64,000 bases of DNA from Octopus sinensis (taxonomy: Eukaryota). The translations under genes were made by a program, and so were the position numbers. Shown here one piece after another: positions 1,571-52,945 of this stretch. Location of the stretch: NCBI RefSeq assembly GCF_006345805.1, contig NC_042997.1, positions 37,944,001-38,008,000 of the forward strand, in the 5' to 3' direction. Within the stretch, counting starts at the first letter, position 1. Each line of letters starts with the position of its first letter. The notes under the pieces are model-generated. The model was not told the DNA's origin and searched no databases. It was given only the letters and a program-made list of their open reading frames with translations.

Positions 1571-2079
1571 CAACAGCTGCTGTTGTTTTTGTTGTGCAGT
1601 TTCTTGATTTGTTGGGGCTGTAAAAATGTATTTTCCTTTCCAGTTTCTGTTTCTTGTTTATTCGTTCATTCATATAAATTCTTACAACTTGTTTACTTTA
1701 GCTGGTGGTTCTTTCGTTTTGTGTTCTTTATTTATGCCGAGAGGTGGATCCGAGGAAAAGTGGAAGACGTATTTTGCATTAGATATAAGCGGCAGAATAA
1801 AATTAAAATATGTTAGGAAATCGATACTAAGGTCTGGCCCAAGTAGATATGAATATTCCAAAGTGCTCGTTAAGTGTTCAAGACTAATGTATAAATCAAA
1901 ATCTAATTTACTTTTTTACGCTTCCACATGTAAAGCTCCGTGAAAAGATTGGGGAAGATTTTTCTCCCGTCCGTCGAAATCCGCAGTAAAATGATATTGA
2001 TGTAAACGATTAGAATATTTTCAAAATTTGACACAAGGCAACCACTTTTGGTGATGAGGAACAGTCGATTGTATAACTG

Positions 2080-2395
2080 TTATTTATTTATCGACCTCCG
2101 AAAGGACGGAAGGCAAGGTCAACCTCGACGAAATTTGAACTCAGAAGGTAACCACTGACGAAATACCTATTTCTTTACTACCCACAAGGGGCTAAACACA
2201 GAGGGGACAAACAAGGACAGACATAGGTATTAAGTCGATTACATCGACCCCAGTGCGTAACTGGTACTTAATTTATCGACCCCGAAAGTATGAAAGGCAA
2301 AGTCGACCACGGCGGAATTTGAACTCACAACGTAACGCAGTCGAAATACCGCTAAGCGTTTTGCCCGGTGTACTAGAGAGTCTGCCTGCTCGCCA
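2080..2395 (-). mobile_element. SINE family B, head-to-tail partial dimer
   Basis: Homologous to 44426-44872. The body segment starting GGTATTTCG (minus strand) occurs twice, separated by the tail ..gtagtaaagaaata. Confidence 0.75.
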
Positions 2396-2903
2396 CTTTA
2401 ATGATGGTAATTATAATAAAAAATGAAAATAAGTAATATTAATGATATTAATAGCAACAAGGTGTAGTCGAATACATCGATCCCATGATGTATCATTTAA
2501 CATCTTATATTTATTCTATCCGCCTCTTTCGCCGAACTACCACAATACAAAACGAACCCAAACCGATTTTCTAATGGTGGTGGGTTACAAAGAAAAACAT
2601 AAAGACAAACATGTATAGATATCTATACATATAAATATACGACAGATGTCTCTCAGTGTCCGCCTGCCAAATTCACTTACAACACAAAAGTCAGCACAAT
2701 GCTGCTGTAAAAGACAATTCGTAATATACCACGTAAGGAACTCAACCCACAACCATCGTTTACGAAACGGACTTCTTACAATACAGCCGCGCCTATGCAT
2801 TTTACGCTTTACACAAAGCAAACAATTTCAAGGCATGGGAGCAGTCTACAACAACTACGGCAATATTTTACTGGTACGTAATAATATCGATCTTGCTTAT
2901 ACA

Positions 2904-6099: not shown

Positions 6100-6425
6100 A
6101 TATATATATGTATGTATATATATATACATACATATGTTTATATATATATATGCAGGTACGTGAATATTCGAATCTACATACGTTATTTAACATGCATATC
6201 TATCTATCTGTATATATATATATATATATATATATAGATAGATATACATATACATAGATACATACAAACATTCATACATACATACATACATAGATACATA
6301 CATACATATATACAAACATTCATACATACATACATACAATCATACATACATACATACATGCATACATACATACATACATACATACATACATACATACATA
6401 CATACATACATACATACATACATGT
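5943..6425. repeat. Compound microsatellite (CT)n/(TA)n/(CATA)n
   Basis: Direct reading. Confidence 0.9.
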
Positions 6426-7284
6426 AGACACACATAGACATACGAGCTTGCATATATACATACATTATAGGCTTCAGAGAAAATTCAGAAAAATAAACAA
6501 TACTTGTTTTCCATTTGTTTTTTGGGGTTTTTTTCGGTTTTATAGTTTTTGATGTTTTTCTATGCATGTCTTTTGAATATTTCTTTGAATGAGTGAAAAC
6601 CGACAAACGCATATTCATAAAGACAAATATCTATCTATAAGATTTTAATGATCAATGAAATATGCAATATACAAATTTACATATAATTTGCATACCTTTA
6701 ATGACATAGGTATGGTTTATAGATTATGCTGTGAAAAGAAATAATATACCAGTGGATTGTAAGAAAAGGAAACCTTTAATATCGCACAAAATTAATTCAG
6801 TAGCATGTAACTTAAAACCGTGTCGGCCAAACGGGGATTATTATTAATATACACGTATTCTGTTCACTACTGTCATATTAATACTGTTCTCTTATATTAT
6901 TCATTATGTATAATTATCTTGCGATGTGCGCTATCTTTACAAATTGAGATATCTCAAACTGAATATATGACTCAAGTATTAGAAATAATATATATTTTCA
7001 AGAAAAATACATACAGAATATGATTGTGTACTTATGAATATTCTATTAGGAAAATGAGATGGACGTAATTGTGTGACATGTTTTTTTTTTAAAAAGTAAA
7101 TGTAATTTCTCTGAGCTGGAAGACACGCACTGGCAACTTATTTGATTCTATGTGATGTTAGTTAAAGTGTTATTACAAAATCCCGGTGTGTTTCCTACAT
7201 TAACTTTTGAAATAATCATATGGAGATAAACAATAATTCATTTCTACATTTTATCTTTTTTTAATTTTGTATTTTAATATATTT

Positions 7285-7449
7285 TATCTTTTACTTGTTT
7301 CAACCATTTAACTTCGGTCATGCCGTGGCACCGCCTTCAAAGGATTTTTAGTGGGAGAAATCCACCCCATGACTTATTTTTGTAAACCCTGGTACTTATT
7401 AACAACGGTAGGAGACAAACACAGACACAAATACACACACACACAACGA

Positions 7450-7480
<31 letters not shown>

Positions 7481-7655
7481 GCACATATATACAACAGGTT
7501 TCTTTTAGTTCGCGTTTACCAATCCATTACCAAGGACTTGGTCGACCCGAGGCTATCGTAAAAGAAACCTAACCAAGGTGCCACACATGGGACTGATACC
7601 GGAACGGTGTGGCTAGGAAGCAAGCTTCTTATCACACAGCCACGCCTACGTCAGT
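7285..7655 (-). mobile_element. SINE family C, diverged copy with internal (CA)n
   Basis: Collinear with 50010-50410 (ttacttgtttca..ggtcgacccgaggctat..ccaaggtgccac..acacagccac). Confidence 0.75.
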
Positions 7656-8264
7656 GGACACACCTGCGCCTCTATATATCTGTGGATTTCAACAAGGGAA
7701 TGGGAATTAACGAGAAATATAGCTACTAAATTTACCGTACAGAGCAGTAGCTGCTCATATATGCATACATACATAGTTATATGCATAAATATATACAATT
7801 CAATTGTTAACTGTTCTTGCTGGCCAGTAGATTCATAACCAAAACCAATGTGTTGTTGACAATAATATCGTTCATGTTTTTATGTATATAACACCAAATT
7901 CTATGTATGAAGCAGTCGAGATAGTCACAATGTAAGGGATTGTGTCATTTGAACAGCTGTTAAAGATATTCCAGGTGATAGGAAGGAACTCATGTGAAGA
8001 TCAAAGACGGACAAAGAGAAACACATAGCTTTAAATTCTGTATTTGCATGCATAGAATAAGCAGGTATGAATGTATACATTCTTTGTATCAAAAGCTTCT
8101 ATATATGAAAACTCATATATTCTATTCAGATTTTGAATTACAATTTAAATATGAATAAAATACAAAAATTATCAAATCAACAAGAGAATAAAATTTTCGT
8201 CTATCTTATAAAAAATTCATATGGGATATTATTTGTTTCGAATTTTGAAGCAAGCCAGCAATTT

Positions 8265-8410
8265 AGCGGGAGGGTCGATTACAGCAGTTCAAGTTCTATA
8301 CTGGTACTTATTGAATCGACTCCGAAGAGACGAAAGGCAAAGTCAGCCACGTCGGAATTTGAACTTAGAATATACAGACGAACGAAATGCTACGAAGCAT
8401 TTTATTCTGC
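8265..8410 (-). mobile_element. SINE family B, degenerate
   Basis: gtcgatt..ctggtacttat..tcgac.ccgaa..gaaaggcaaagtc..ggaatttgaact motif string shared with 2240-2350. Confidence 0.65.
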
Positions 8411-8939
8411 TATATCGCCGCCTTCATATCAAATAATATTTAATATGTCAAAAAATATATTATGGCTGCTAGAACATAAGTGATAAGTATTAATATGCTG
8501 ACATAACGATACATTTCGAAAGCTCGATCCGAATCATTTAACTCCATATTAAACGTTAATACTTCATTAGAAATGTATGAAAACTATTAGAATCAGTTTT
8601 TTTCCCTTATGTCAAAAGTCACATGTTACGATTCAAGTAATTCAAATATGATTTTTCAATTCATATCAAGCAACGGATTACGGTTTGTATAAACGCTAGT
8701 TTTCCTAAATGTTTTGAAAAAGTAATGCTTTAAATGAATTTTACTTATATTAATTTTCCTTAATTATGCATGTTAATTGGGTAATTATAGAATTAATTAT
8801 GGTTATTACGAATAATGCACATTCTGAAAGTAATTTAAACGCGTCCACTCTTCACTACACTTGATACATCATTTATATTTTATACATCATTTTTTAAAGA
8901 TTCCATCTTCTGTCTTATATATGTGTATATAAAAAAAAA

Positions 8940-10882: not shown

Positions 10883-11087
10883 AAAGGAGAGATGTACTTA
10901 CATATCTACATATACATATAGATCTATATACAGATAAACATATGCATATATATGTGTGTATATATATATACATACATACGTACGTACATACATATATAAA
11001 TACGTACGTACATACATACAAACATACGTATATAACAACATACGTACATACATACATACATACATATATACATACATATATACATAC

Positions 11088-11648
11088 AAGTATATCCCAT
11101 GTTACCTAAAATTGATTTCTAATCAGACAAAATCATACATACGTACGTACATACATATATACACACGTACGTACATACATACAAACATACGTATATAACT
11201 ACATACGTACATACATACGTACATACATACATAATACATACATACATACATACATACATACATACAAGTATATCCCATGTTACCTAAAATTGATTTCTAA
11301 TCAGACAAAATCATACATACGTACGTACATACATATATACACACGTACGTACATACATACAAATATACGTATATAACTACATACATACATACATACATAC
11401 ATACATACATACATACAAGTATATCCCATGTTACCTAAAATTGATTTCTAATCACACAAAATCATACATACGTACGTACATACATATATACACACGTACG
11501 TACATACATACAAACATACGTATATAACAACATACGTACATACATACATACATACATACATACATACATACATACATACATACATACATACATACATACA
11601 AGTATATCCCATGTTACCTAAAATTGATTTCTAATCAGACAAAATCAA
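11088..11648. repeat. Minisatellite: four copies of a 48-bp core separated by variable (TACA)n/(TACG)n spacers
   Basis: Core aagtatatcccatgttacctaaaattgatttctaatcagacaaaatca starts at ~11088, 11266, 11417 and 11600. Confidence 0.9.
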
Positions 11649-14994: not shown

Positions 14995-15340
14995 TGTGTG
15001 TGTGTGTGTGTGCCTCTGTGTGTATATATGTTTACACAAACGCATGCACGCACGCACACACACGCATACATAGACACATATATACATACATACATGCATA
15101 CATACATGCATACATACATACATACATACACACACATACATACATACATACATAAATACATACATACATACATACATTCATACATACATACATACATACA
15201 TACATTCATACATACATACACACATACATTCATACATACATATATTCATACATACATTCATACATACATACATACATACATACATACATACATACATACA
15301 TACATACATACATACATACATACATACGTAGGTACATACA
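14995..15340. repeat. (GT)n/(CA)n/(CATA)n compound microsatellite
   Basis: Direct reading. Confidence 0.95.
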
Positions 15341-22148: not shown

Positions 22149-22719
22149 TATATATATGAGTAGCGTACGCAGTCAATAATTATGAATCGATTTTTCAAAT
22201 ATCATGACGTATATTTATTGTACATGTAACTATATAATCCACTTACATACATAAATGTTAGTGTCGTTTTAAAGATATTTATGTTACTTTAAATTTTCTT
22301 TCATATTTCATTTGTTTCCCTGAAGTTAATGAGAGAGGACGTTTGAAAAACTATTCTAAATATGATAGTAATGATGCTAAACAAAAATGATGTTGTGAGT
22401 ATTGCCTACACAAAAGGGAAATGTGGAAAATTGGAATGAAGGACAAATCGTTTATTTGTTATTTTTATCCCCATAGTACTTGGTAATTTATATATTAATG
22501 TCCATTAAACTTTATTTTTTTTTGGTATATACCTATTCTTTATCCGTGTGTGCGTTTTCTGAATTAATGCCATTTGTTTGCTATATACCCATAGTTAAAT
22601 ATGTGAGAGTGCATGATTGTGTTCATATGTATGTGACTTTGGGAGCTTTGGGTAAGACGAATATATAGACGAAGAGGTAAATTGATAGATATAGACACAT
22701 ATACAGACGCATCGAATGA

Positions 22720-23193
<474 letters not shown>

Positions 23194-25361
23194 CTGAAAC
23201 TACACCATGTTTACGTTACTTCAATATATTTCCGTTGAAAATAAGAAATTGAAAATCTTATGTTATCAAACAGTTCATATTCAATATTTACATTATAATG
23301 TATACATATATATAATTTTGTCAAACAGTTTCGTCACATAAAACAATGAAACTTTTTCCTTCTTTTGCTGCTTCGTTTGTTTGCCACACTTTTCAAACCA
23401 TTTGATATTTTAAGTGACGATGTGCTGCTACGATTCTAAAGCAAAACGTGAACATTATTCGTATGTTTGTGAAAGCGACATTAGCTATATTTCCATTCTT
23501 TTGATCATAAAACAATTAACTCTGAAAGTTTGCCTTTCCTTCTATTGAAATGTATAATATCCGTGATCAATGCCAGAACAAAGAGTGTGTAGATTTGCAT
23601 CTTCTTTTCGTAAGTACGCTTATTGATGTGAAATTAACTTTGTTACTTATATTGCTTTTATATTTTCAACATTATGCACAACTTTAAATGGAGCGGATCT
23701 TCAGACAATTAACATTAAATGGACCATATTTGGTATAATTTTCTCATTAAATTGCGTAAAAGAGCAATCTGCGACAAACAAACTGAAATCAGTTGTAAAA
23801 CATTTTGATCGATCGCTGAAACATTGTCTATAATTAACCTGATAGCGGTTGTTTTCTTACATTCGTGATAACGAAAACATTTGTTGCCAATGATATGATC
23901 AAGCTTTGTAAATATTTGTATATTTAGTTATCATTAAAAATAGGTATCAATACTTCCAGATGAAGTAGCGATCAAAAGCATAGTTAACGTTGTGTTACCA
24001 AAGTATAGATATGTTTACATTTATGGCGGAATGTCAACAGTACATCGAAAATTAATTACTTTTTATTTGCCAAACTAGTATGAAATGTCAAGCATACTAC
24101 ATAGCCTGAGAATAAAACTATAAATAATTGTGGTTTGCAATTCCCTATCGATAAAAGGAATCATTTGAGACTCAGGGAACGCGAATAGCATCGAAATAAA
24201 AAAGGCTAGTGTGTTTGGCCTTCATAGAAATATGTTAGTATCCGTACCACAGAATCTTACGTTAGTGAGTGTTTCTGTTTAAAGCGGGGTGTAAGCTAGT
24301 CTTCTTTGCCCCAGAGATACCGGCTGAAACTACCGGGAATTGAATCTGAATATTTATTTGCTCCGAACTCTTGACGTTCCTGTTGATTTCCCTATAAATA
24401 GTTTTCAGCATCTGCAGTTAATATCAAAGTAACCACATCGCAGTCTGCACCGCAGTATTTGACTGCTTCAGGTCGCGTGTTAACACTTTATTCAGTTTCT
24501 GAGTTTCTACATATATATATATATATATATATGTGCATGTACGAGTGTGTACATGTGATTTGCTTGTGTGCGACTGTGTGTACGAGTACATGTGTGAGTC
24601 TGTAAGTGTGTGAGTGTATGTACTTGTGTGACACAAACACAAACAGAGAGTAAGAAGAATTGAGTCTCTCTCTCTGGCTCTCTCTTACTCTCTCTCCCCT
24701 ATCTCTCTCTCTCTTTATTTCTCTCTCACTTTCTGTGCATATCTGTTTGTTTTTAATGATCAATTATTCCAACACTTCTAATAGTAATAGAGTTTATAGA
24801 TTAAAACGCTTTCTGTGTACAACACCTCCGAAAAATCATTATTTCATAATGTAAAATTTTTAAACCTGTATTTAACAGTTTAAAATGTAAACTTCACATA
24901 TCACTGCAGTTGGTTATTTATACATTGGCGTGGTATTTTTGAATGTATACCTTTACAGTAAACACATTATGTGTGGAAAGTAATTATATAAAAAGCTTTT
25001 AAAATCTCTTTTATCTTTTCTCTTTTACACACATTCACAGAATGGTAAAATTATTTTTGTGATATTTCGCTAGAATCCGATGGTTAAAAAGAAATAATGC
25101 TTTAGTTAAATAAAAGTTCGCATACAAAGACATTTTTTCAATATTATATTTTGTATGTATATAGTAACCCGTGGTACGTAAGCATGTATATATGTACTTG
25201 TGTATGTGCGTGTGTATGTGTGTGCGTGCGTGTGTATGTGTGTTTATAAATATAAATATATATATAGAGAGAAAGAGAGACATGTAGATGATAGGTAGAT
25301 AGATAGATAGGTAGATATATTGATAGACAGACAGACATATAGATAAATAGATAGATAGATA

Positions 25362-26184
25362 TGTTTGTTTATTAGCCACACAGGGCTGCACACAGACAGG
25401 ACAAATTACAAGGTAGAGCTTTTCTTTTGGCGGTAAAAAAAGGTGGTTTGGTTTTCGATCAAAAAGGATCGTAAAAGGAAAGAAAGAGGACAAAAAAGGG
25501 GGGAATAAATTTTTTAAAAAGTGGGGGAAGGGAAAGGAAAAAAATTGATCAATAGGGATTGTTATCACAGAAATGTCAATATGAAGTGTAAAGGGGAGGA
25601 CAGGTGAGGTTTACCCGTGGAAAGAGAAGGCTACGGAAAAGACCACGGTAACCTCGGTCAATGAAGTCACATGTTATAAATCTTTCTTTTTTTTTGCAAA
25701 TAAGCAACTCTCTGTATTAATTTTTACGGTTCATAGAATCATAGTCAAAGTGGCTTCGTCATTCATACGTGCCATCCTTGCTACATTCACCCATCTTTTT
25801 TTAAAACATTCACTAGACAAAACTTGCCTCTCTACTCTCACTTTCCTCTTCAAGTGATATTTGAAGAAGTTGATGAGAGATTGACCAGAGAGGAAAGTGT
25901 TTGTCTCTAATCCTTTCAGGCGCGTCCACCAGATACATTCTTTCGCCATAGCCACAAGTATGATAAAAATAGCTCTTTCTTCTCGTTTGAAGGAAGGAGG
26001 CGTGATGATATTAACGATAGACTCGGCTGATAAACCGATATGTCCCACACGTGACAGCAGTCGTTTGACATAAGCCCATAGGTCGGAAATTGTTGGACAC
26101 TGCAGGATTGCGTGCAGAGTGGTTTCGTCGCTCTGCCCGCATCTCGGGCAGGTCGGCCCCGTGTTTCTCGAGCCATGCCTATAG
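25362..26184 (-). mobile_element. 5'-truncated Tx1-clade LINE copy (ORF2 C-terminus and 3' UTR)
   Basis: YRHGSRNTGPTCPRCGQSDETTLHAILQC..ATLTMIL*, nearly identical to 26945-27390; 3' end AATAAACAAACA|TATCTATC; 5' junction inside (TATC)3. Confidence 0.92.
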
Positions 26185-26195
26185 ATAGATAGATA

Positions 26196-26442
26196 AATTT
26201 CTTTATTGGCCACACAGATGGGACAAGTTACAAGGTAGAGCTTTTCTTTTAGGGGATGAAAAAAAGGGGGTGGCGTAGGTTTTCGATCAAGAGGGATCGT
26301 AAAAGGGAAGAAAAGAACCAAAAATATAATAAAAAAGGAAAAAAAAATAAATAGAATAAAAAATAAAAAGAATAAAAGAAAAAAAGAAAGGGAAAAGGAA
26401 CAAAAGAAAAGAGAAATGAAAAAAGAAGAAAAAGTGGAAAAA

Positions 26443-26443
<1 letters not shown>
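26196..26443 (-). mobile_element. Very short Tx1-clade copy (3' UTR end only)
   Basis: Homologous to 26562-26720; 3' end AATAAAGAAATT|TATCTATC; 5' side abuts (TATC)n. Confidence 0.8.
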
Positions 26444-26499
<56 letters not shown>

Positions 26500-26561
26500 C
26501 AGATAGACAAACAGGCAGATAGATAGATAGATATATAGATAGATATATATATATATAGATA
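26444..26561. repeat. (GATA)n between Tx1 copies
   Basis: Direct reading. Confidence 0.95.
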
Positions 26562-26944
26562 TGTTTCTTTATTAGCCACACAGGGCTGCACACAGAACAA
26601 ATTACAAGGTAGAGCTTTTCTTTTGAAGGTTTAAAAAATAAAAAAAAATAAAAGGTAAAAAATAAAATAAAAATAAAATAAAAGAGGGGGGGTCGATCAA
26701 AAGGGATCGTAAAAGGAGAGAAAGAGGACAAAAAAAAGGGGGGAGAGGAAAAAATTGATCAATAGGGATCGTTATCACAGAAATGTCAATATGAAGTGTA
26801 AAGGGGAGGACAGGTGAGGTTTACCCGTGGAAAGAAAAGCCTACGGAAAAGACCACGGTAACCTCGGTCAATGAAGTCACATGTTATATTTCTTTTTATT
26901 TTTTTTTTTGCAAATAAGCAACTCTCTGTATTAATTTTTACGGT

Positions 26945-29900
26945 TCATAGAATCATAGTCAAGGTGGCTTCGTCATTCATACGTGCCATCCTTGCTACAT
27001 TCACCCATCTTTTTTTAAAACATTCACTAGACAAAACTTGCCTCTCTACTCTCACTTTTTTCTTCAAGTGATACTTGAAGATGTTGATGAGAGATTGACC
27101 AGAGAGGAAAGTGTTTGTCTCTAATCCTTTCAGACGCGTCCACCAGATACATTCTTTCGCCATAGCCACAAGTATGATAAAAATAGCTCTTCCTTCCCGT
27201 TTGAAGGAAGGAGGCGTGACGATATTAACGATAGACTCGGCTGATAAACCGACACGTCCCACACGTGACAGCAGTCGTTCGACATAAGCCCACAGGTGGG
27301 AAATTGCTGGACACTGCACGATTGCGTGCAGAGCGGTTTCGTCGCTCTGCCCGCATCTCGGGCAGGTCGGCCCCGTGTTTCTCGAGCCATGCCTATAGAG
27401 CTTATCCCGAACGGGTAGCGCTTCTCGGTAGCACCGCCAGGCCAGGGATCTCTGGAAGTTGTCCATAGGTCCCTGGCCGAAAGTCGTTTGAAACAGGCGG
27501 GTCAGGTATTCCTCGTCGACGCCCAGGTTTGCCCCGAGCTCGTCGTCGTACCTCCCCCCACTAATCCCCTATAGAATGCTTTGGTTGTGTTGAAGTCACT
27601 CAAGGTCGACCCGGGACGGCAGAGTTGCTTGAGAGCAACGCGACACTCGCGGTGCCATTCGCCCTTCTTCGGCCTCTTTTTGATCCACGACTGTAGTTCG
27701 GTCATGGAGACGAGTTGCGGGAATGCGTGCCTCACAAACGGCGACCACACCTGTTCACCGTCGTCTACATAGAGCCGGAGATGTCGCAGTCTCAGCGCGT
27801 GTCTGCGCATCATCAACCACGGCATGCCCAGCCCTCCTTTTAACGGGTGTTGACAGCAAATGGATCGCCTGACCATCGGGACGCATCCTTTCCACAAGAA
27901 GCGGAAGAGGATGCGTTCTAGTTTGGTGATGGTAGGGTCGGGACAAGGTACGACGGTCAGGCGGTAGTAGATGATGGACGCGATGTACGCGTTCACCACC
28001 TCCGCCCGACCTTTTAGGGACAGTTTCCTCTCGGCCCATTGCTGGGCGAGAGTGACCACCCTACTCGTTATCTCGTTCCAGTTCTTCACCATTTGGAGGT
28101 CCGGACCGAACCAGACCCCGAGCAACTCAACCGGGCCGTCTGTCCAGCGTCCCACGACGGAGGTACTGGTGGACGGCATGGGCTTGCTTCTCCAGGTGCC
28201 GAGCCGCAAGCCCACTGACTTTTCCCGGTTGATTTTTGCTCCTGTCACCGCTTCGTAGTCTTTCAGTGTCTCGCCGACCCGCTCGATGTGCTCGTGGCTT
28301 GACACTATGACGGTGACGTCGTCCGCGTATGCAGACACGCTCGTCCCGCATCCTAATTCTCGCGGGATGCCCCTCAGAGTCGCCAGCTTTCGCAGTAGTG
28401 GCTCAAGAGTCAATACGTATAGAAGCGCCGAGAGGGGACATCCCTGACGGACCGAACGTGCAATGTCGAAGGGTCTCGATAGATATCCATTTACGCGAAT
28501 TACCGAACGGATGCCTCTGTACAAGGCAGCTATCCAGCCGCGGAAGACGGGACCGAAACCAGCCGCTCTCAGGACTGCCTCCAAGTATCGATGGTCTACC
28601 CTATCAAAGGCTTTCGATTGATCCAAGTTGATCAGGGCCCCACCCATGCCAGGTTCGTTAACTACCCTGTCTATGATGTAGCGCATCAGATGGAGGTTGT
28701 CATGGATGCTCCGGCCCGGCACGGCGCACGTTTGTGCGTTGTCGACCAGTTTCTCCATGACAAGCGCCAACCTCTTGGCTAACACCTTTGTCAAAATTTT
28801 CAGGTCTGCATTGAGCAGAGTGATTGGCCTAAAGTTATCTATAATGTTTCCCTTGTTTGGATCTTTCTTCAGCAGAGTTACAGCTCCTCGACTCACAAAA
28901 CCGGGTATGCTCCCGTTTTGCTGCCAGTTGCAGTATACCGCTGCCAAGACGTCTCCAAACAAGTCTGGCATACAATAGTAAAATTCGTAGGGTAGACCAT
29001 CCAAACCCGGTGATTTGTCCCTCGAGCATTCTGCCATCGCTTCCCGCACTTCCGCCGCCGTGATGGCACCTTCGCAGCACCCTGCCTTTCTTGTCGAGAG
29101 TCGTGGCAGGCTATGTAGGTAGGCACTGAAGTCTACCCTACGTTCTTGCCCTCCACTCGTCCCGAACAGTCGGGCAAAATGCTGCTGAAAGGCCTAACAC
29201 ATTTTACTTGGCTCGAGCAATTCGCGCCCCTGTTCATCTACCAGTGACCGAATGGTGGATTTGTTGCCCTGTTGCGCCTCTGCCACCCGGGCCTCTCTCG
29301 CGGCTCCAACACCTTCGTTCCTTAGAGCACGCATCCTAGCTCTGACAGCACATCCTTCGTGTTTGGCGTTGAAGTGTTGGTCGAGGGCCAACCTCGGCGC
29401 CAAAACGTCGGATGCGATGCCGCTTCTAATTGCCTCTTCTAGCTTCTTAACTAGCTCACCCTCTACTCTATTTCTATCTAATCGCTTCTGTTTTTACTGC
29501 TCTCTTGAGGGCAAACCACCATTTGTTGTTGATGATGGCTCCCGTCAAAGCCCTCTTTACTAGTGTGCTAATCCGGTCTCTGAAAACTTGTCTGGACGGG
29601 AATGATGCGTTCAGTTTCCAGTACCCAGGACCCTGTCTATGTGCCTTATCTAAGTCTAGCGTACACGTCACCAATTTGTGATCCGTGTAGCTGACTGTGT
29701 GGAATTGTGGACATCCTAAGTTATACTTGTCTACTGTCCTACACAATATCCTATCTAGATACGATCTCGACGACCCACTGCGGTTGCTCCATGTCCACGT
29801 TGGTGCATTTGGGTGGTCGAGTCGGTACCTGTCAGACAGTTGGAATCGTCTGAGCAGGTCTCTGAGGCATTTGCATCCCCTTCTGTTTCTGTCTCTACCC

Positions 29901-30359
29901 ACGTAGTCTACATGCGTGTCCAAGGTAGCATTCCAATCCCCCACTAAGAGTAAAGGACGAGACGTTCCCAAGAATACTTCTAGACGTCGAAAGAAATCCG
30001 CCCGACCTGTTAAGGGCGGTGCGTAGACTGATACGAGTCGAAAAGCGCACCCATTGCCGCCGTCAACACGTCCAGAACGATCAGTCTACCCTCGGGTCTA
30101 CGAATATCGTCTTGACTTCGAGATCCAGGCTCTTGTGAAAAAGTACCGCGGTGCCACTACCGCCCATCCTCGGCAGACAGGGAGCGAAATAAATGTTAAA
30201 CTGTCCGCCAAACATGGACTTTAGGGCCCGTGGCTCGTGGAGTCTGGTCTCACTTATGGCTATGATTCCCAAATCATGTGACTTGATGTCATTTAGGAGG
30301 TATCCTTGTTTCCAAGGAGACCCCAAGCCACGCGCATTCACACAACCAATCTTGACCAT
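26945..30359 (-). pseudogene. ORF2: AP endonuclease, reverse transcriptase and C-terminal zinc finger, disrupted in this assembly
   Basis: APE: CVNARGL, IAISETRL, LVGDWNA, SYLDRILC, YTDHKLV. RT: KSPGLDGLPYEFY, FRPITLLNADLKILTK, LDQSKAFDRVDH, VRQGCPLS, AYADDVT, LLGVWF. C-term: CPRCGQSDETALHAIVQC. Frameshifts near 30095, 30065, 29478 and 27555; in-frame stop at 29194. Confidence 0.95.
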
Positions 30360-30409
30360 GATTCTATTGGGGTGTGTGCTTTAAAACACACAAATGAAAG
30401 TACAGAGAG

Positions 30410-32514
30410 TTACTTACTTGTGTCGAAAGTTTTGGCTTCCTCGTTCTTTGATGTGTCTTCGAGGAGGTTTCTATATAGTTTTTGGGACAGATATTTCTGG
30501 AAACCCCCTACAGCATTTGGGAAGAGGGCTTTGAGTTTGTGGTGTTGTGTTTGTGTGATGTGTAGTATTTTGATGTGTTTGGGTGGTGTAGTGCGTGGAT
30601 GATTGCTATTTTTAAAGTCATCTTCACAAATGTTTGTGTATCCTGTGATGTACTCCATTAGTTGGGAGTCTTTTGTGTCTATCGCTGATAGCATTGTTTT
30701 TGTGGTGTTGGTGCTTGTTTTGTTGTGTATGGAGTTTTCAGGGTTCAGGTATCTCCCTGCTTTGGTTGCGATTTCTTGTTTGGTTTTTCTTGATCTTTTT
30801 CTTTTACCCCCTGTGGCTATTTGCCATTCTGTCGAACTTTCATCGTTAGATGAAAAGTCTGACGAATCAGCAGGGGGCAAGGGTAAAGCGTCTGGGTGTG
30901 TTTGTGCGGTTGTAGATATTGTTGTGGTGCGCAGGGAGGGTGTTGCTGGGGGGTTTGTTGTAGTTATTGTCTCTCCTACATCCTTGGTGCTTGTCTTCTT
31001 CGTTGTTATTCTTGGTGTTGGAATTGGTTTATTTGTTGTTGGTGGTGATGATTCTGTTCTTGGCGCTGGTGTTGGTGTTGTTTGGTTGGGTTGGCTTGTT
31101 CTTTGTTGTTTTTCCTGCATTTCCGCATACAGCTTCTTGACTAGCTGTCCATATTGTGGTGTGGGCAATAATCCTGGCTTTTGTGATTTTTCTGTGGCTG
31201 TTGTTGTTGTTGTAATTTTGCGGCAGATTTGCACTCCTTTTTGAGGTGTGCCTCACTGCCACATGTATAGCATCGTGGCCTTCTGCCCTCGACTACTACG
31301 TATAACTTGCGGCCATCCTCAAGATGTACGTGGGTGGGGATTTTATTTATGTCCTCTTGACTTATGTGGAAGAGGAACTCTATTCTCTTTCCCAGCCAGT
31401 CCTTGTTTTCCGAAACACCGATATCTAGGATGTTTAAGTCCTCCATTTCGGATGTTAAGGCGGATGTAATCCACAGTGTTGTAGTCACTTGGGGGACACC
31501 ACTGATAATGACTTTCGTCACCTTCTGGCCGAGGTAACTCGGTGTCAACGTTAGTTCATCAGAATGAAGGGTTATCGTTGAGAATTTCTTCGCCAACTCT
31601 TCATTCTGAAAAACCACCTGTACGTGTGCGAACTTGTTCGCCCAAGTCACACAATCCTTGTATCCCCAGATGGGGCGTAAGCACTTTTCGACTTTGTCTG
31701 TGCTTGCCTTTTCTGGACTTTTTGTTTTTTTATTTGTGATTTTATATACAATTGTCTTTTTTTTTTCCTCATTCAGTATGTGCTGAGGTATGTGTAAGAG
31801 TATTTTTCCGTTTTGATTTGTAATAAGGTTTCTGCAATCTTTAATCTGTTGTGTAGTAAACGAAACTTTTGTTACCTTTTCTTTTATCGCCTCGGCGAAG
31901 TTTGTTGTTGTTTTGTTATTGTTGTTACTGCCGGTGGTGTTGGTGTTGATGGCAGGGGTGTGGGTTGTAGGTTTGTGGTTGCTGATTATGCAACTAGCAA
32001 GGGGTGGAAAATTGCCTGCGTAATTTAGTCCTGCATTAGCGCAAATTTCGGCATTTCGTTTGCTTGTCGTCGTTATTTTTTCACTTGTTGGTGATGGAGT
32101 GAGCAGTGGTTGAAGGGAAATGTTGTTGTCGTCGTCGTTGTTGTTGTTGTTGTTGTTATTGTCGTTCTTGGTGACGGCGGTGGTGTTAGTAGTATTAGTA
32201 GCATTGACGGCACGGTCTTTGGTGGCGGTGATGGTGATGTTTGTATTGTTATTGGTGGCGACGTCTTTAGTAGGGATAGCAGTTTTAGTAGCAGATTCTG
32301 CCATGGTGTTGTTGTCGGTGTTGGTGGTGGTGGTGGACTCACTGATGGTGTTGACGGTGCTTGGCCTTGCGACCTTTGTTTTGTATTTGTTGCTGTTGTC
32401 GATGTTGATGGTGGCGGAGTTGTCAGGGTCAGCGTAAGGTAACAGAGCATCCTGTTTTTCTGCCTCTGCGTCACGCTTGACTTGCACCTCAGCCTCGTGG
32501 TGACCAGTGGCCAT
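30410..32514 (-). pseudogene. ORF1: nucleic-acid-binding/chaperone protein with a CCHC knuckle, split by one frameshift (~31185)
   Basis: ATG at 32514; Thr/Asn-rich N-terminus; RRM-like region (VQVVFQN..KVIISGVP); CYTCGSEAHLKKEC (CX2CX4HX4C); continues in the 30410-31234 frame. Confidence 0.85.
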
Positions 32515-32728
32515 TTTGGAAATAAAATGGCTAAATGAAACCACGAAGGCTATGAGAATTTTTTCTTTTAAATTTTGCCCACAAGGGGCAAAATTTTGTG
32601 TAGATATTAATCAAGGTTTGCAGTGGATGTTGTTGCACAACTTTTAAACACAAAATATTTCACAATAAACAATTTTCAACGTACAAAATGACCAACTTAC
32701 GTGGAGCCCATTTGACTAGCGTCCGTCC

Positions 32729-32754
32729 AGATAGATAGATAGATAGATAGATAG

Positions 32755-32850
<96 letters not shown>
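32729..32850. repeat. (GATA)n at the 5' junction of the Tx1 element
   Basis: Direct reading. Confidence 0.97.
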
Positions 32851-33419
32851 CCGTCATGTGTATGTATGGAAATGACATGGGCACTAGATTTACTATTTTT
32901 TATTAGATTTTATCTTTAACCCAAATTTATAAGACGGTTTCCAATTCAGGAAAGTAATTTTGTACAGAGTAACAATCAGAGGCTAATGGGAAATATGGTT
33001 AATTACCTTTGATACTATTGCTCACGAAAATTTTACTTTAGATACATCGAAAAACAAATAGTGGAAATAATCCTACTTCATATATGTAATTTTATATTTC
33101 TTCAAAGATTATCCATATATTCTTCATTACGCGCACATATACAAGACATATGTACACGCGCTCCACACTTGCACACACTTATACATACATGAGGAAGGCC
33201 CCTGTTAGGGGCTTTGGAGCTTTAAGTAGCACGGAATTCGAATAAAACTCTTTATGTATATGTTTATATATATATATATATATATATATTACGGATATTT
33301 GTCGATTCTGTTGTTTGATGATTCTGGAATTGTGGTTTATATAAACAAATTGTTTGCTTGTTTCAGTGGGACGTAAACATTCCTGATGAAAAATATTAAG
33401 TTCCGAAAATCGATTAAAG

Positions 33420-33480
<61 letters not shown>

Positions 33481-34927
33481 CGTAGGGGCTTTCAGTAAAG
33501 TTCCCGATTTCGCAGACGTGATTACAATTTACTTTGCATGGACGCACTTGATATTTTAAGAAGTAAATTTCGATAAAGTATAAAAAGTATAAATCGATTG
33601 AGTTGCTAATTCGTTGACCTCACCCGGTTGACAAACCGTTTTTGAGGATTCCGTTTTTGTCACTTATGTATTGCACTATACTATAGTGTAAGATTGCATA
33701 TGTGTTTCTTTCAATAGCGCATAATTTCTTACCTCTACTATCATCTTCCTATTTTTATCCAATATAATGATCTTAACCACTCTCTAGAACTCTAATTATA
33801 TATCAATTATTTATTAATTACTCATTAATTATACGGATATTTATTCATTTAATTATTGCCCGGTTCTTAACTGACGTATCATTTCCCATTACAAAGTTAC
33901 ATTTCCCTATTTCACTATTTTATAGTTCCGTTTAATGAAAGATTATTTTTATCGTTATTATTCACTATTTATATTATTTTATGCTATGTTATTTTAGTAC
34001 TGAATCATGATATTTGGGCTTTCATTTCTCTTGCCGTTCTCCATATAAAGCAAAATTAATCAATCCCTTTAATTTTACGTCTTTATATCTTTCAATAATT
34101 TTCTATCTTTCTATTATTCATGATCATCTTCAATTTATCTATCTCAGCTTTCAAATTTCCTTAACCTTTCTCATGTTATCTAACACATATTGAGGTTAAT
34201 CCTGATGTAGTCACGTTTACTACTGAGTTTTGTAGATGCCATTGTGTTTACTACTACCCAAATTGAAATACCATCGTCTTTACTTTAAAAAGAACTAGCT
34301 ACATTATATGTTCCTTGTCTCACCTAACGTTTTATGTCTGACATCCGATTTCATTTATGAAGTAGTCCTTCCTTTGGTCAATTATTCAAGTACCTTTCTA
34401 TAGGCTTCTCCGTATAATAAATTACACACAGCAACATCTTAAGTCATTCCCATACATTGTATTTAGAAAGATATTCATGATAACGCAAAAGTATTGTATC
34501 TTTTGGAAGGTCGTAATGGGATAACAAAACTGTAGCATTTAATATCTAATGAAATTACATAATCATCGTTTGTTTTATTTTCTACTCTAGGCACAAGGCC
34601 CGAATTATTGTTTATAATGGTTCCAGCATATATGTTTTATATAATCCATTATCTACAATCGAGGACGGGTAATAAATTTGATACCAATGCTGTCATATAC
34701 GTATTCACTATATATATATATATATATATATAAACATTATCGATATAGGGTGAAAGATAATTAATCACCTAGTAGTTTTTTTGCGATGTGTGAGTTACAT
34801 TGTTGTCTGTGGGGACATATTTTAGTAGAAAAAGGAAATAGTAGTATTTTGGCTGCTATTTCTAAAATTTTCGGTATGTGGTCAAGCAAAGTGTTCCAAA
34901 ACCCTTATTGTCATAATTATATATATA

Positions 34928-34928
34928 T

Positions 34929-35019
<91 letters not shown>

Positions 35020-44410: not shown

Positions 44411-44887
44411 GGTATATATTTAAGGCTACCTGGCAGAAACGTTAGCACAACGGGTGAAATGCTTAGCGGTATTTCGTCTGCCGTTACGTACTGAGTTCAA
44501 ATTCCGCCGAGGTCGACTTTGCCTTTCATATATATCTTCTTTCATTATTTTCTCTATTCTTTTATTTGTTTCAGTCATTTGACTGCGGCTATGCTGGGGC
44601 ACCGCCTTTAGTCGAGCAAATCGACCTCAGGACTTATTCTTTGTAAGCCTAGTACTTATTCTATCGGTATAAGTCAATGAATGAATATTAAACAGATTCT
44701 ATGTAATCTTTCCTGATTCTATGTAATCTTTGCAAGACTTTGCCTTTCATCCTTTCGGGGTCGATAAATTAAGTAGTAGTTACGCACTGGGGTCGATGTA
44801 ATCGACTTAATCCGTTTGTCTGTCCTCGTTTGTCCCTTCTGTGTTTAGCCCCTTGTGGGTAGTAAAGAAATAGGTATATATTTAAGG
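44411..44887 (+). mobile_element. SINE family B with a 15-bp TSD (GGTATATATTTAAGG, 44411-44425 and 44873-44887), interrupted by a 206-bp insert
   Basis: Exact direct repeats read from the sequence; the two SINE halves rejoin across the insert. Confidence 0.88.
44530..44735 (-). other. TSD-flanked insert that is an inverted copy of 49818-50008
   Basis: Flanked by GACTTTGCCTTTCAT (44515-44529 and 44736-44750); matches the reverse complement of 49818-50008, including its non-SINE flank. Confidence 0.85.
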
Positions 44888-51399: not shown

Positions 51400-51615
51400 A
51401 AGGCGGCAAGCTGATGGAATCGTAACTGCGCTAGACTAAATGCTTAGCAGCATTTCTTATGTCTTTACGTTTTAAGTTCAAATTCCACCGAGGTCAGCGT
51501 TGCCTTTCATTTTATCAAGGTTAATGAAATAAGCACTAGTTGAGCACTACTGCTAATGTAATTAACTTACTCGTACCCGAAATTGCTGGCCTTGTGCCAA
51601 AATTTGAAACCGATA
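51400..51615 (+). mobile_element. SINE family B, diverged
   Basis: gtaaggcggcaagctg..aaatgcttagc..gttcaaattccaccgaggtc..gcctttcat. Confidence 0.7.
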
Positions 51616-51967
51616 TAATGCTGCAAGTTAAATAACTAAGCAGTTCAAAGTAAGCTAATGTTAACTTTTTCCCCTTTCGGGGTTATACATTAAAAGTTGG
51701 TACTACCAAATCCTAAAATAATCTTCTCTTATCAATCGATAGCTTCGTACCAACGTGAGGGATTACTAATTAAGGGCAACATATGGTAAAATGTTATCTA
51801 TAATTTAGTGTTCAGTACGTGTATGTAATCCCAACATTTATTTGTCATGTTGCCAAGCCGAACGAGTTCATTTTTATAGATTGTAATTAAGAGAAAATTG
51901 GCAACAGTGATTAGAGTTTCCAGTGTCTACTGTTTCATTGTATATTTAGTAGCAATATACCGGCTTT

Positions 51968-52195
51968 CGTAAGGCGTCGATCTGGCAGAACCGTTAGCAC
52001 GCCTGACAAAATTCTTAGCGGCATTTTGTCCATCTTTATATTATAAGTTCATATTCCCCACGAGGTTGACTTCGCATTTCAACATTTCGGGGTCGATAAA
52101 AGAAGTCCCAATTGAACACTGAGGTCGATGTTATCGACTTAATACTCACCCGAAATTGCTTGCCTCGTGCCAAAAATTTTAAACCAATATATCGG
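51968..52195 (+). mobile_element. SINE family B, diverged
   Basis: gtaaggcg..tggcagaaccgttagcac..cttagcggcattt..ttcggggtcgataaaa. Confidence 0.75.
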
Positions 52196-52236
52196 CTTCC
52201 GAAATTCCACGGAGATATATAGTTGACTTTATCGCC

Positions 52237-52428
52237 GAGGGATCCCGGGTTCGAATCTCAGACCGGGCGATGTGTGTGTTTATGAGCGAAACACCTAAGC
52301 TCCACGCGGCTCCGGCAGAAGGTAATGGCGAAACTTCAGCTGACTCTTTCGCCACAACTTTCTCTCACTCTTTCTTCCTGCATCTTGAGGCTCACCTCCG
52401 ACGGACCGGCCCTTATGAGCCAGGCATG
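52237..52428 (+). mobile_element. 5'-truncated SINE family A, tail type 2
   Basis: Homologous to 12330-12600. Confidence 0.78.
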
Positions 52429-52724
52429 GCTCAAGAAGGAACAGACAACAAGACCTATCTCAGCTGTACAATCTTTTATCGATTCTAGAAGAATGGAAAA
52501 CAAAGTTGGCTTCAGAAGGACTTAAACTCAGACTCTGAAGAGCGGGATGTCATATTGTGAATTAATGTTTCCACGCTCTGATTATTTTGTCAAACCAACA
52601 GTAATATTGTGATTCGTATAATTACAAAAAATAGAATTGTTTTCAGTTTAGAAACAAGAACAGCGATTTGGATAGGAGGCATAAAATCAATAGCATTGAC
52701 CTCAGTACTTGACTGGTACAATAT

Positions 52725-52945
52725 CGATGGTGAGCTGGCAGAAACGTTAGCACGTTGGGTGAAATGCTGAGCGGTATTTCTTCTTTACGATCTGAGTTCA
52801 ATTTCCGCCGAGGTCGAAAGGATGAAGGGCAAACCTTCATCCTTTCGAGGTCAATAGATTAAATACCAGGTGCGTAGCGGGGTCGATCTAATCGAGTGGC
52901 CCCCTCACCAAATGTTTCGGGCCTTATGCCTAGAGTAGAAAAGAA
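52725..52945 (+). mobile_element. SINE family B with an internal inversion hairpin
   Basis: gagctggcagaaacgttagcac..ccgccgaggtc; 15-bp perfect stem at 52814-52848. Confidence 0.78.

What the first reader, a model, noticed from the sequence alone, without database searches (positions are those of the whole stretch)
25362..32850. Candidate (GATA)n/(TATC)n-specific Tx1-clade retrotransposon: three same-strand copies stacked in one array
Seen, on the minus strand: (TATC)n - 6.2-kb element - (TATC)n - 250-bp copy - (TATC)3 - 820-bp copy - (TATC)n. All three 3' ends are AATAAA plus 6 nt joined directly to TATCTA, with no poly(A). The three 5' ends differ but each abuts TATC, and the 820-bp copy starts at a TCTAT microhomology with the repeat. 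The copies differ by scattered substitutions, favouring separate insertions. Established: Tx1-group LINEs include sequence-specific families (Kibi at TC, Koshi at TTC, Keno at U2 snRNA, Dewa at tRNA arrays, Mutsu at 5S). I do not know of a GATA/Bkm-repeat-specific family, but could not check Repbase. Inference: an APE with GATA-repeat specificity, and re-insertion into regenerated target.
Basis: partly seen in the sequence, partly recalled or inferred. Interest (0 to 1): 0.85.

Follow-up and report, generated by a model that had tools for sequence, protein, structure and literature searches.

The report
Octopod LINE copies stacked in (ATCT)n array
A dead full-length copy and two truncated copies of an octopus-type L1/Tx1-like jumping gene sit head-to-tail inside one (TATC)n microsatellite, which hints at, but from a single locus does not prove, a preference for landing in that repeat.

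Summary
The described anatomy is real and accurate to a few bases. On the minus strand it reads: (ATCT)31, a 6,168-bp LINE, a 118-bp (ATCT)n array, a 248-bp 3' fragment, 14 bp of ATCT, an 820-bp 5'-truncated copy, then degenerate (ATCT)n. The element is an APE+RT+zf-RVT LINE of the L1 group. Its closest relative is in the octopod Argonauta hians (67% aa), and copy A is dead (frameshifts and a stop).

The (GATA)n-specific reading is only partly supported. In favour: the same repeat, in the same orientation, abuts all six element ends, while such arrays cover only about 1% of the rest of the window.

Against:
- There is only one locus.
- The Argonauta relative ends in ...GAAATCTAT and lies in ordinary DNA with a 17-bp target duplication.
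- Another relative carries an (ATT)n tail.
- Head-to-tail stacking occurs in 4 of 7 other long loci of this LINE group without any microsatellite, once inside a single target duplication. Stacking therefore does not show three re-insertions.

Best reading: the element's RNA tail pairs with the nicked target, which favours (ATCT)n arrays. APE sequence specificity is untested. If confirmed, this would be a new member of a known kind (Kibi/Koshi-like). Interest is modest.

The parts
32729..32850 (-). (ATCT)31 array directly upstream of the 5' end of the full-length copy. Its far side abuts unique DNA.
   Evidence: TRF period 4, 31 copies, 96% matches.
26561..32728 (-). Copy A: a full-length (6,168 bp) but dead L1-group/Tx1-like LINE. 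It has a ~200-bp 5' UTR, ORF1, ORF2 (APE-RT-zf-RVT) and a ~380-bp 3' UTR ending AATAAAGAAACAT.
   Evidence: The 5' UTR length is similar to that of the Argonauta copy, which is bounded by a TSD.
31141..32544 (-). ORF1 of copy A (467 aa, T/N-rich N-terminal part, one CCHC knuckle). Its C-terminal continuation is frameshifted into the 30410-31234 ORF.
   Evidence: One search gives zf-CCHC at E=0.006, below Pfam's cut-off. In one search, Argonauta ORF1 matches in frame 1 and then frame 3.
29474..30359 (-). APE (endonuclease) domain of ORF2, split over two frames.
   Evidence: Exo_endo_phos E=2e-6 and 0.0025.
27502..29049 (-). Reverse transcriptase part of ORF2. There is an in-frame stop just upstream, near 29196.
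   Evidence: RVT_1 E=3e-32; 67% identity to an Argonauta hians protein.
26945..27466 (-). C-terminal zinc-binding (zf-RVT, CX2CX8HX4C) part of ORF2, frameshifted relative to the RT.
   Evidence: E=1.4e-8.
26443..26560 (-). (ATCT)n array between copy A and copy B. It is degenerate (ATAT, GCCT, GTTT, GTCT variants) next to A and pure next to B.
26195..26442 (-). Copy B: a 248-bp 3'-UTR-only fragment ending AATAAAGAAATTT. It carries a 12-nt deletion and an expanded T/C-rich stretch.
26181..26194 (-). ATCTATCTATCTAT spacer between copies B and C.
25361..26180 (-). Copy C: an 820-bp 5'-truncated copy (end of ORF2 plus 3' UTR), 94% identical to copy A. Its 5' junction shows TCTAT microhomology.
25252..25360 (-). 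Degenerate (ATCT)n downstream of copy C, running into a compound TA / CA-rich microsatellite.
   Evidence: TRF 25252-25361, 74% matches.

Best explanation
The locus holds one decayed full-length copy and two 5'-truncated copies of an octopod L1-group (probably Tx1-clade) LINE. Its transcripts end in a conserved ~35-nt 3' block (…CTGTGT..GCCC.TGTGGCTAATAAAGAAAN) followed by an (AUCU)n tail instead of poly(A).

Integration is by target-primed reverse transcription. The nicked target strand pairs with the last bases of the RNA. In this species those bases are (AUCU)n, so pairing is best in (ATCT)n·(AGAT)n arrays, whether native arrays or the tails of resident copies. Such arrays therefore become preferred, orientation-specific landing sites. 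Each insertion leaves ATCT on both sides, and no target duplication is visible.

The head-to-tail stack arose in one of two ways. Either later copies re-inserted into the array or tail, or the reverse transcriptase switched from the 5' end of one RNA onto the (AUCU)n tail of another during a single event. Copy C's TCTAT junction fits either route.

Shown: the anatomy, the LINE identity, the tail, and the behaviour of relatives. Inferred: tail-guided target choice. Untested: any sequence specificity of the APE itself.
For: - All six element ends abut ATCT in the sense orientation. Native (ATCT)n arrays with no LINE end beside them exist nearby, cover about 1% of the window, and carry the same GTCT/TATA variants as the flanking arrays.
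- Copy A's 5' end abuts a 122-bp array whose other side is unique DNA, so no upstream copy is there to supply a tail.
- The tail is lineage-specific while the 3' block is conserved: TCTAT in Argonauta, (ATT)n in JGI contig L003, (ATCT)n here.
- In Argonauta, the three TSDs read (LINE composite 17 bp, SINEs 15 and 8 bp) each overlap the element's terminal TAT or AT. That is 2-3 nt of pairing between the RNA end and the target.
- Head-to-tail stacks are common in this LINE group. L001 has a LINE plus a second 3' UTR unit inside one TSD. L002, L023 and L024 are spacer-less tandems. SINE-SINE stacks occur at L001 12827-13323 and window 2400-2074.
- Known Tx1 families target microsatellites identical to their tails.
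Against: - There is one locus only. No second copy of this family from the same genome could be obtained.
- The closest relative integrates into non-repeat DNA, so array preference would have to be recent.
- The upstream (ATCT)31 could in principle be a tail-only product of one more template switch.
- Stacking occurs in relatives without microsatellites, so it is not itself evidence for a microsatellite preference.
- No consensus 3' RNA structure was found.
Confidence: 0.5

Rival explanations
1. This is the first reader's model in its strict form: a Kibi/Koshi-type site-specific family. The APE nicks (GATA)n·(TATC)n sequence-specifically, and three independent insertions went into the array and into target regenerated by earlier tails.
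For: - The same repeat lies on both sides of a full-length copy and of two truncated copies, all in one orientation.
- There is precedent for microsatellite-specific Tx1 families: TC, TTC, TTCC and TTTC.
- In relative L024, a second element sits exactly at the first one's 3' junction, with the 8-bp TCAAAATC repeated. This shows that sequential re-use of one nick site occurs in this group.
- The APE is much more diverged from the Argonauta relative (29-53% aa) than the RT (67%).
Against: - The APE specificity is untested.
- The Argonauta relative and its SINE partners use ordinary AT-rich targets with TSDs.
- The independence of the three copies is not shown, because copy A is as decayed as the A-C divergence would allow.
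- Some of the low APE identity reflects frameshift damage in copy A.
Confidence: 0.2
2. This is a non-targeted LINE that merely carries an (ATCT)n 3' tail. One integration event, or one read-through transcript of an already stacked source, produced the concatemer C-B-A by template switching onto RNA tails. The upstream array is then either a tail-only fourth segment or a chance neighbour.
For: - The Argonauta composite (a full-length LINE plus a second, 77%-identical 3' UTR unit) is enclosed by one 17-bp TSD at a non-repeat site.
- Spacer-less tandems occur in L002, L023 and L024.
- Many LINEs with microsatellite tails are not target-specific (general knowledge, e.g. the I factor with its (TAA)n tail).
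Against: - It needs RNA tails of 120 nt or more. That in turn implies source copies lying upstream of long ATCT arrays.
- The chance of a native array at the 5' junction is only about 1%.
- The arrays flanking the copies carry the same degenerate variants as native arrays.
Confidence: 0.2
3. The stack is a post-insertion rearrangement or an assembly artefact. A single insertion was partly duplicated, by unequal exchange or replication slippage between ATCT arrays or by mis-assembly of a repeat-rich region.
For: The region is extremely microsatellite-rich (93 TRF rows in 64 kb). The array at 22718-23193 shows a higher-order internal duplication.
Against: - The three copies have three different 5' end points, each joined cleanly to ATCT.
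- They differ by substitutions and indels (94% A-C identity; B has a 12-nt deletion and a different T-rich stretch).
- Unequal exchange between the flanking arrays would duplicate whole units, not nested 3' fragments.
Confidence: 0.07

Closest known systems
Kibi ((TC)n) and Koshi ((TTC)n) of teleosts, and crocodilian Tx1 families that prefer (TTCC)n/(TTTC)n (Kojima & Fujiwara 2004; PMC4494074)
   Same: These are APE-type, L1-group LINEs with two ORFs. They have a microsatellite instead of poly(A) at the 3' end, and the same microsatellite on the 5' side. Copies sit inside arrays in one orientation.
   Different: The repeat unit here is ATCT/TATC (= GATA on the other strand), which is not in the target lists I could read. 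The evidence here is one locus, not a genome-wide flank census. Clade membership is untested. The nearest relative is not microsatellite-bound.
Dong (R4 clade, (TAA)n), Waldo ((ACAY)n) and Mino ((AC)n) (R1 clade)
   Same: They insert into microsatellites, and the tail matches the target.
   Different: They belong to different clades. Dong uses a restriction-like endonuclease, and Waldo and Mino are R1-clade. Here the RT is closest to L1 ORF2p.
LINEs with short-repeat tails but no target specificity (e.g. the Drosophila I factor with (TAA)n; CR1/L2/RTE-type tails), and the seeding of microsatellites by retrotransposon tails (PMC3812793)
   Same: They have a simple-repeat 3' terminus in place of poly(A). 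The tail can grow into, or merge with, a microsatellite.
   Different: Those elements do not normally have the same repeat abutting their 5' ends, nor several copies nested in one array.
Template jumping or switching by non-LTR reverse transcriptases (R2, L1), which produces chimeric or tandem insertions (from my own knowledge, not checked here)
   Same: The joins are head-to-tail, from the 5'-truncated end of one copy to the 3' end of another, with a few bases of microhomology (TCTAT here, GGT in the window's SINE stack). The Argonauta composite lies inside one TSD.
   Different: This is a mechanism, not a family. It does not by itself explain the array at copy A's 5' end.
L1-Tx1 LINEs annotated in octopus genomes (13 recently active families in O. 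vulgaris, PMC13282606)
   Same: They occur in the same host group and have the same broad class. This family is very likely already present in such repeat libraries.
   Different: Those annotations say nothing about a 3' (ATCT)n tail, target preference, stacking or SINE partnership.

Membership tests
APE-type non-LTR retrotransposon, L1 group | ORF2 has an N-terminal apurinic-like endonuclease, a central reverse transcriptase and a C-terminal Cys/His zinc-binding motif. | tested here: met
   Pfam finds Exo_endo_phos, RVT_1 and zf-RVT in that order along copy A and along the near-intact Argonauta copy. The CX2CX8HX4C motif is conserved in alignment A1.
APE-type non-LTR retrotransposon, L1 group | The RT is closer to L1 than to other LINE groups. 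| tested here: met
   phmmer against PDB, using the RT-containing ORF2 part of the Argonauta relative (L001) as query, gives human LINE-1 ORF2p at E 3e-51 to 1e-50, with the next-best R2 proteins at 1e-26. The APE of the same copy matches only an L1-EN variant, 2v0s. Only solved structures were compared.
Tx1 clade | The RT groups with Tx1/Keno/Kibi/Koshi, rather than with L1 proper, in an RT phylogeny. | not testable with these tools
   No Tx1 reference sequences (Repbase/Dfam) were available. Indirect support only: in mollusc and octopus surveys the only L1-group category reported is L1-Tx1.
Tx1 clade | There is a separate ORF1 with CCHC zinc knuckle(s). | tested here: inconclusive
   There is one CCHC knuckle in ORF1 of copy A (E=0.006) and of the Argonauta copy (E=0.0037). 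Both are below Pfam's gathering score. No other ORF1 domain was recognised.
Microsatellite-specific LINE (Kibi/Koshi type) | The same microsatellite abuts both the 5' and 3' ends of copies, in a fixed orientation. | tested here: met
   This holds at the one available locus. All six ends of three copies abut ATCT.
Microsatellite-specific LINE (Kibi/Koshi type) | The target is seen in a large share of copies genome-wide (over 20% of flanks, the criterion of PMC4494074). | not testable with these tools
   The source genome is not in any searchable collection. There were no further copies in the window, no exact-protein record, and no hits in the metagenome, viral or prokaryote scans.
Microsatellite-specific LINE (Kibi/Koshi type) | The endonuclease cleaves the repeat specifically. 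| not testable with these tools
   This needs biochemistry. Copy A's APE is frameshifted.
Microsatellite-specific LINE (Kibi/Koshi type) | Close relatives share the behaviour, so that there is a lineage of specific elements. | tested here: not met
   The Argonauta relative (67% aa) and three SINE copies with the same tail lie in ordinary DNA; TSDs were read for the LINE composite and two of the SINEs. Relative L003 has an (ATT)n tail. This lowers the case for an old specific lineage, but not for a recent, species-level preference.
LINE-SINE partnership through a shared 3' tail | SINEs of the same hosts end in the LINE's 3'-terminal block. | tested here: met
   Alignment A2 shows that the last ~35 nt are shared by the LINE copies (window, Argonauta, L003) and by SINE copies in the window and in Argonauta.

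The most novel reading that the evidence does not exclude
This octopod family may be a true (ATCT)n/(GATA)n-targeting LINE, which would add a target motif not yet recorded for site-specific non-LTR elements. It would also belong to a cephalopod L1/Tx1-like lineage whose members habitually integrate at the 3' terminus or tail of resident copies. On that reading, target choice is set by pairing between the RNA's last bases and the target, so a change of tail (TAT to (ATCT)n, or to (ATT)n) re-programs the target.
Probability: 0.3. Interest if true: 0.5.

Novelty: new member of a known kind. Interest (0 to 1): 0.33.

Why it matters
If a genome-wide census confirms the preference, the element would add a tetranucleotide (GATA/TATC) target to the short list of microsatellite-targeting LINEs. 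It would also provide a natural series of relatives that share one 3' recognition block but differ in tail: TAT, (ATT)n and (ATCT)n. That series could test whether target choice follows the RNA tail or the endonuclease. The lineage also appears to be the autonomous partner of very abundant octopod SINEs, which bears on how octopus genomes were shaped. As it stands, this is one decayed locus of a known class of element.

Tried and rejected
- More copies from the same genome. None of these searches found a copy of this family:
  - The window self-BLAST found none.
  - The exact-protein look-up was not on record.
  - An exact 22-mer scan of the JGI metagenomes gave 0 hits.
  - The protein-guided metagenome scan gave only 32-38% relatives, L005-L018, which were of no use.
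  - A degenerate 3'-end pattern gave 0 hits in IMG/VR and 0 in GTDB genomes.
- The look-up of P0110, a 57% relative from a contaminated MAG, was not on record.
- The Rfam scan of the window, L001 and L002 found nothing. There is therefore no snRNA, tRNA or rRNA target between stacked copies.
- ARAGORN on the window and on L001 found no tRNA. I dropped the idea that the 130-bp spacer in the Argonauta composite is tRNA-like.
- RNAalifold on the 3' ends predicted no consensus structure. I therefore make no claim of a 3' hairpin for this family.
- The literature search for a GATA/TATC/TCTA/TAGA-targeting LINE found nothing. The supplement of PMC4494074, which lists Tx1 targets, is not held. Absence from this library is not proof of novelty, and Repbase/Dfam could not be consulted.
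- I considered and rejected the view that A-C divergence proves separate insertions (see the report).
Full report
**1. Observation**

Reading the minus strand of 25000-33300 and running TRF confirm the reported anatomy almost to the base:

| Feature | Coordinates | Notes |
|---|---|---|
| Unique DNA | upstream of 32850 | ends ...catgacgg |
| (ATCT)31 | 32850-32729 | 96% matches |
| Copy A | 32728-26561 | 6,168 bp, ends AATAAAGAAACAT |
| (ATCT)n | 26560-26443 | degenerate next to A, pure next to B |
| Copy B | 26442-26195 | 248 bp, 3' UTR only, ends AATAAAGAAATTT |
| ATCTATCTATCTAT | 26194-26181 | 14 bp |
| Copy C | 26180-25361 | 820 bp, ends AATAAACAAACAT |
| Degenerate (ATCT)n | 25360-25252 | merges into TA- and CA-rich simple sequence |

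- None of the three copies has poly(A).
- A 22-mer from the 3' UTR occurs exactly three times in the window, against 0 expected. BLAST finds no other copy in the 64 kb.
- A and C are 94% identical over 796 aligned nt. B aligns well only over its last ~110 nt. It also has a 12-nt deletion between two CTGTGTG repeats and a longer T/C-rich stretch.
- Copy C begins at AGGCATGG. In copy A that sequence is preceded by CTCTAT, and in the locus by ATCTAT, so the 5-nt microhomology is real.

**2. What the element is**

- Pfam finds Exo_endo_phos (two pieces), RVT_1 (E=3e-32) and zf-RVT along ORF2, and a weak CCHC knuckle in ORF1.
- The best protein match is a hypothetical protein of the octopod Argonauta hians (67% identity). 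Next come two JGI metagenome proteins (71-73% over shorter spans) and many 45-53% matches, one of which is named as coming from a cuttlefish. The window is therefore most likely from an octopod.
- Against solved structures, the RT-containing ORF2 part of the Argonauta relative is closest to human LINE-1 ORF2p (E about 3e-51), with R2 proteins far behind at 1e-26. This places the family in the L1 group.
- Whether it falls in the Tx1 clade could not be tested, because no reference Tx1 sequences were available. The indirect argument is that surveys of molluscs and octopus report L1-Tx1 as the L1-group representative.
- Copy A is dead. Using the Argonauta ORFs as a guide, ORF1 changes frame once and ORF2 runs through frames 2, 3, 1, 1, 3. 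There is also an in-frame stop near 29196.

**3. Relatives change the picture**

*(a) Argonauta locus L001*
- It carries a nearly intact copy. ORF1 is whole and ORF2 is broken by a single in-frame stop.
- The outermost 3' end is ...GGCTAATAAAGAAATCTAT.
- The insertion is bounded by a perfect 17-bp target-site duplication, TATTTTTAAAATTTGTA, in ordinary AT-rich DNA rather than in an ATCT array.
- Inside that single TSD, the full-length element is followed by ~130 bp and then a second complete 3' UTR unit that is only 77% identical to the first. This is a head-to-tail composite made in one integration, or copied from an already composite source.

*(b) JGI contig L003 (71% aa)*
- It ends ...GGCCAATAAAAGAAATC and is followed by (ATT)n to the contig end.

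*(c) More distant relatives (about 50% aa)*

| Locus | Structure |
|---|---|
| L002 | two copies, period 7,547 bp, no spacer |
| L023 | three copies, period 6,432 bp, 99% identical |
| L024 | the 3' part of one copy abutting a full-length copy, which is followed by a short element with the same tail; the 8-mer TCAAAATC is repeated on both sides of that short element |

Stacking therefore occurs in 4 of the 7 other long loci examined, as well as in this window, and none of those cases involves a microsatellite.

*(d) SINEs*
- SINE copies in the window (2165-2400, 44736-44875) and in Argonauta share the last ~35 nt with the LINE (alignment A2).
- They also stack head-to-tail (L001 12827-13323; window 2400-2165 onto 2167-2074, with a GGT overlap).
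- The three Argonauta TSDs I could read (17, 15 and 8 bp) all overlap the element's terminal TAT or AT. That is 2-3 nt of complementarity between the end of the RNA and the target.

**4. Interpretation**

- The conserved part of the 3' end is the ~35-nt block. The last few bases differ by lineage: TAT, (ATT)n or (ATCT)n.
- The microhomologies at Argonauta targets suggest that priming uses pairing between the nicked target and the RNA's terminal bases. With an (AUCU)n terminus, pairing would be strongest in (ATCT)n arrays, so these become preferred, orientation-specific sites.
- Such arrays are native and common here. Arrays at 22718-23193 and 34921-35019 have no LINE end beside them. Outside the locus they cover about 1% of the window.
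- Copy A's 5' end abuts a 122-bp array whose far side is unique DNA. This is hard to explain by chance and is the strongest single argument for array preference.

- The locus cannot show that the APE itself recognises GATA.
- It cannot show that there were three separate insertions. Copy A's own decay means 6% A-C divergence is compatible with a common date, and the Argonauta composite shows that single-event stacking occurs. L024's repeated 8-mer shows that sequential re-use of a nick site occurs too.
- It cannot show that the behaviour is family-wide.

I give about 0.5 to tail-guided preference for ATCT arrays, 0.2 to a strictly APE-specific Kibi/Koshi-like family, 0.2 to a non-targeted element with an ATCT tail plus template switching, and under 0.1 to rearrangement or artefact.

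**5. Comparison with known systems**

- It works like the microsatellite-targeting Tx1 families: Kibi (TC), Koshi (TTC), and the crocodilian Tx1 families on TTCC/TTTC.
- The ATCT/GATA unit is not among the targets I could find in the searchable literature.
- Membership in a specific-targeting family is not established. The census criterion and the endonuclease test were not testable, and the test on relatives failed.

**6. Verdict**

This is a real and accurately described locus. The element is an ordinary class of LINE and is inactive here. The target-specificity claim is plausible but rests on a single locus. It would be a new member of a known kind if confirmed. Interest is modest, at 0.33.

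The side observations may be as useful as the original claim. These are the shared LINE/SINE tail, the habitual head-to-tail stacking across this cephalopod LINE group, and the fact that the tail varies between lineages.

Noticed in passing
window 2165-2400 (-), 2074-2167 (-), 44424-44530 (+), 44736-44875 (+); weaker matches at 8274-8365 and 51438-52895; L001 799-1030 (-), 1132-1640 (-), 12827-13323 (+): Octopod SINE copies end in the same ~35-nt block as the LINE (TCTGTGT..GCCC(T)TGTGG[C/G]TA[A/G]TA[A/G]AGAAAT). This LINE lineage therefore looks like the autonomous partner, or a close relative of the partner, of these abundant SINEs.
   Followed up: partly
L001 4870-4886 and 10651-10667; L001 780-800 and 1030-1060; L001 1120-1135 and 1640-1660: Argonauta insertions with this tail have ordinary TSDs (17, 15 and 8 bp) at non-repeat sites. 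Each TSD overlaps the element's terminal TAT or AT, giving 2-3 nt of microhomology between RNA end and target. One SINE also has a run of extra G's at its 5' junction.
   Followed up: partly
L001 10014-10653: Inside one TSD, the Argonauta full-length LINE is followed by ~130 bp of unidentified sequence and then a second complete 3' UTR unit. That unit is only 77% identical to the first.
   Followed up: partly
L002 (period 7,547 bp), L023 (period 6,432 bp, three copies, 99% identical), L024 1-2672 versus 6281-8818: Related LINE families (about 50% aa) in ENA assemblies of unknown organisms form spacer-less head-to-tail tandems. Their 3' ends share GGCCTTGTGCC, a short inverted repeat and AATAAA. 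In L024 a ~330-bp element with the same tail sits exactly at the LINE's 3' junction, with TCAAAATC repeated on both sides.
   Followed up: partly
L003 2019-2105: A 71%-identical relative from a JGI metagenome has the conserved 3' block followed by at least 85 bp of (ATT)n. This is a different microsatellite tail on the same type of 3' end.
   Followed up: no
window 22718-23193, 25252-25361, 26443-26561, 32729-32850, 34921-35019: All five (ATCT)n arrays in the window have the same strand orientation. The 476-bp array at 22718-23193 contains a ~120-bp higher-order duplication (the block ATCTGTCTGT[T/C]TGTGTGACTGTCTG... occurs twice).
   Followed up: no
window, whole: Simple-repeat density is extreme: 93 TRF rows in 64 kb. 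These include long ATAC/CATA arrays (10960-11600, 15065-15340) and a 151-bp-period repeat at 11159-11568.
   Followed up: no
window 31900-32440 (-): The N-terminal ~200 aa of copy A's ORF1 is T/N-rich low-complexity sequence (ACC/AAC codon runs). It has no counterpart in the Argonauta ORF1, whose match begins at about residue 18 against window 31899.
   Followed up: no
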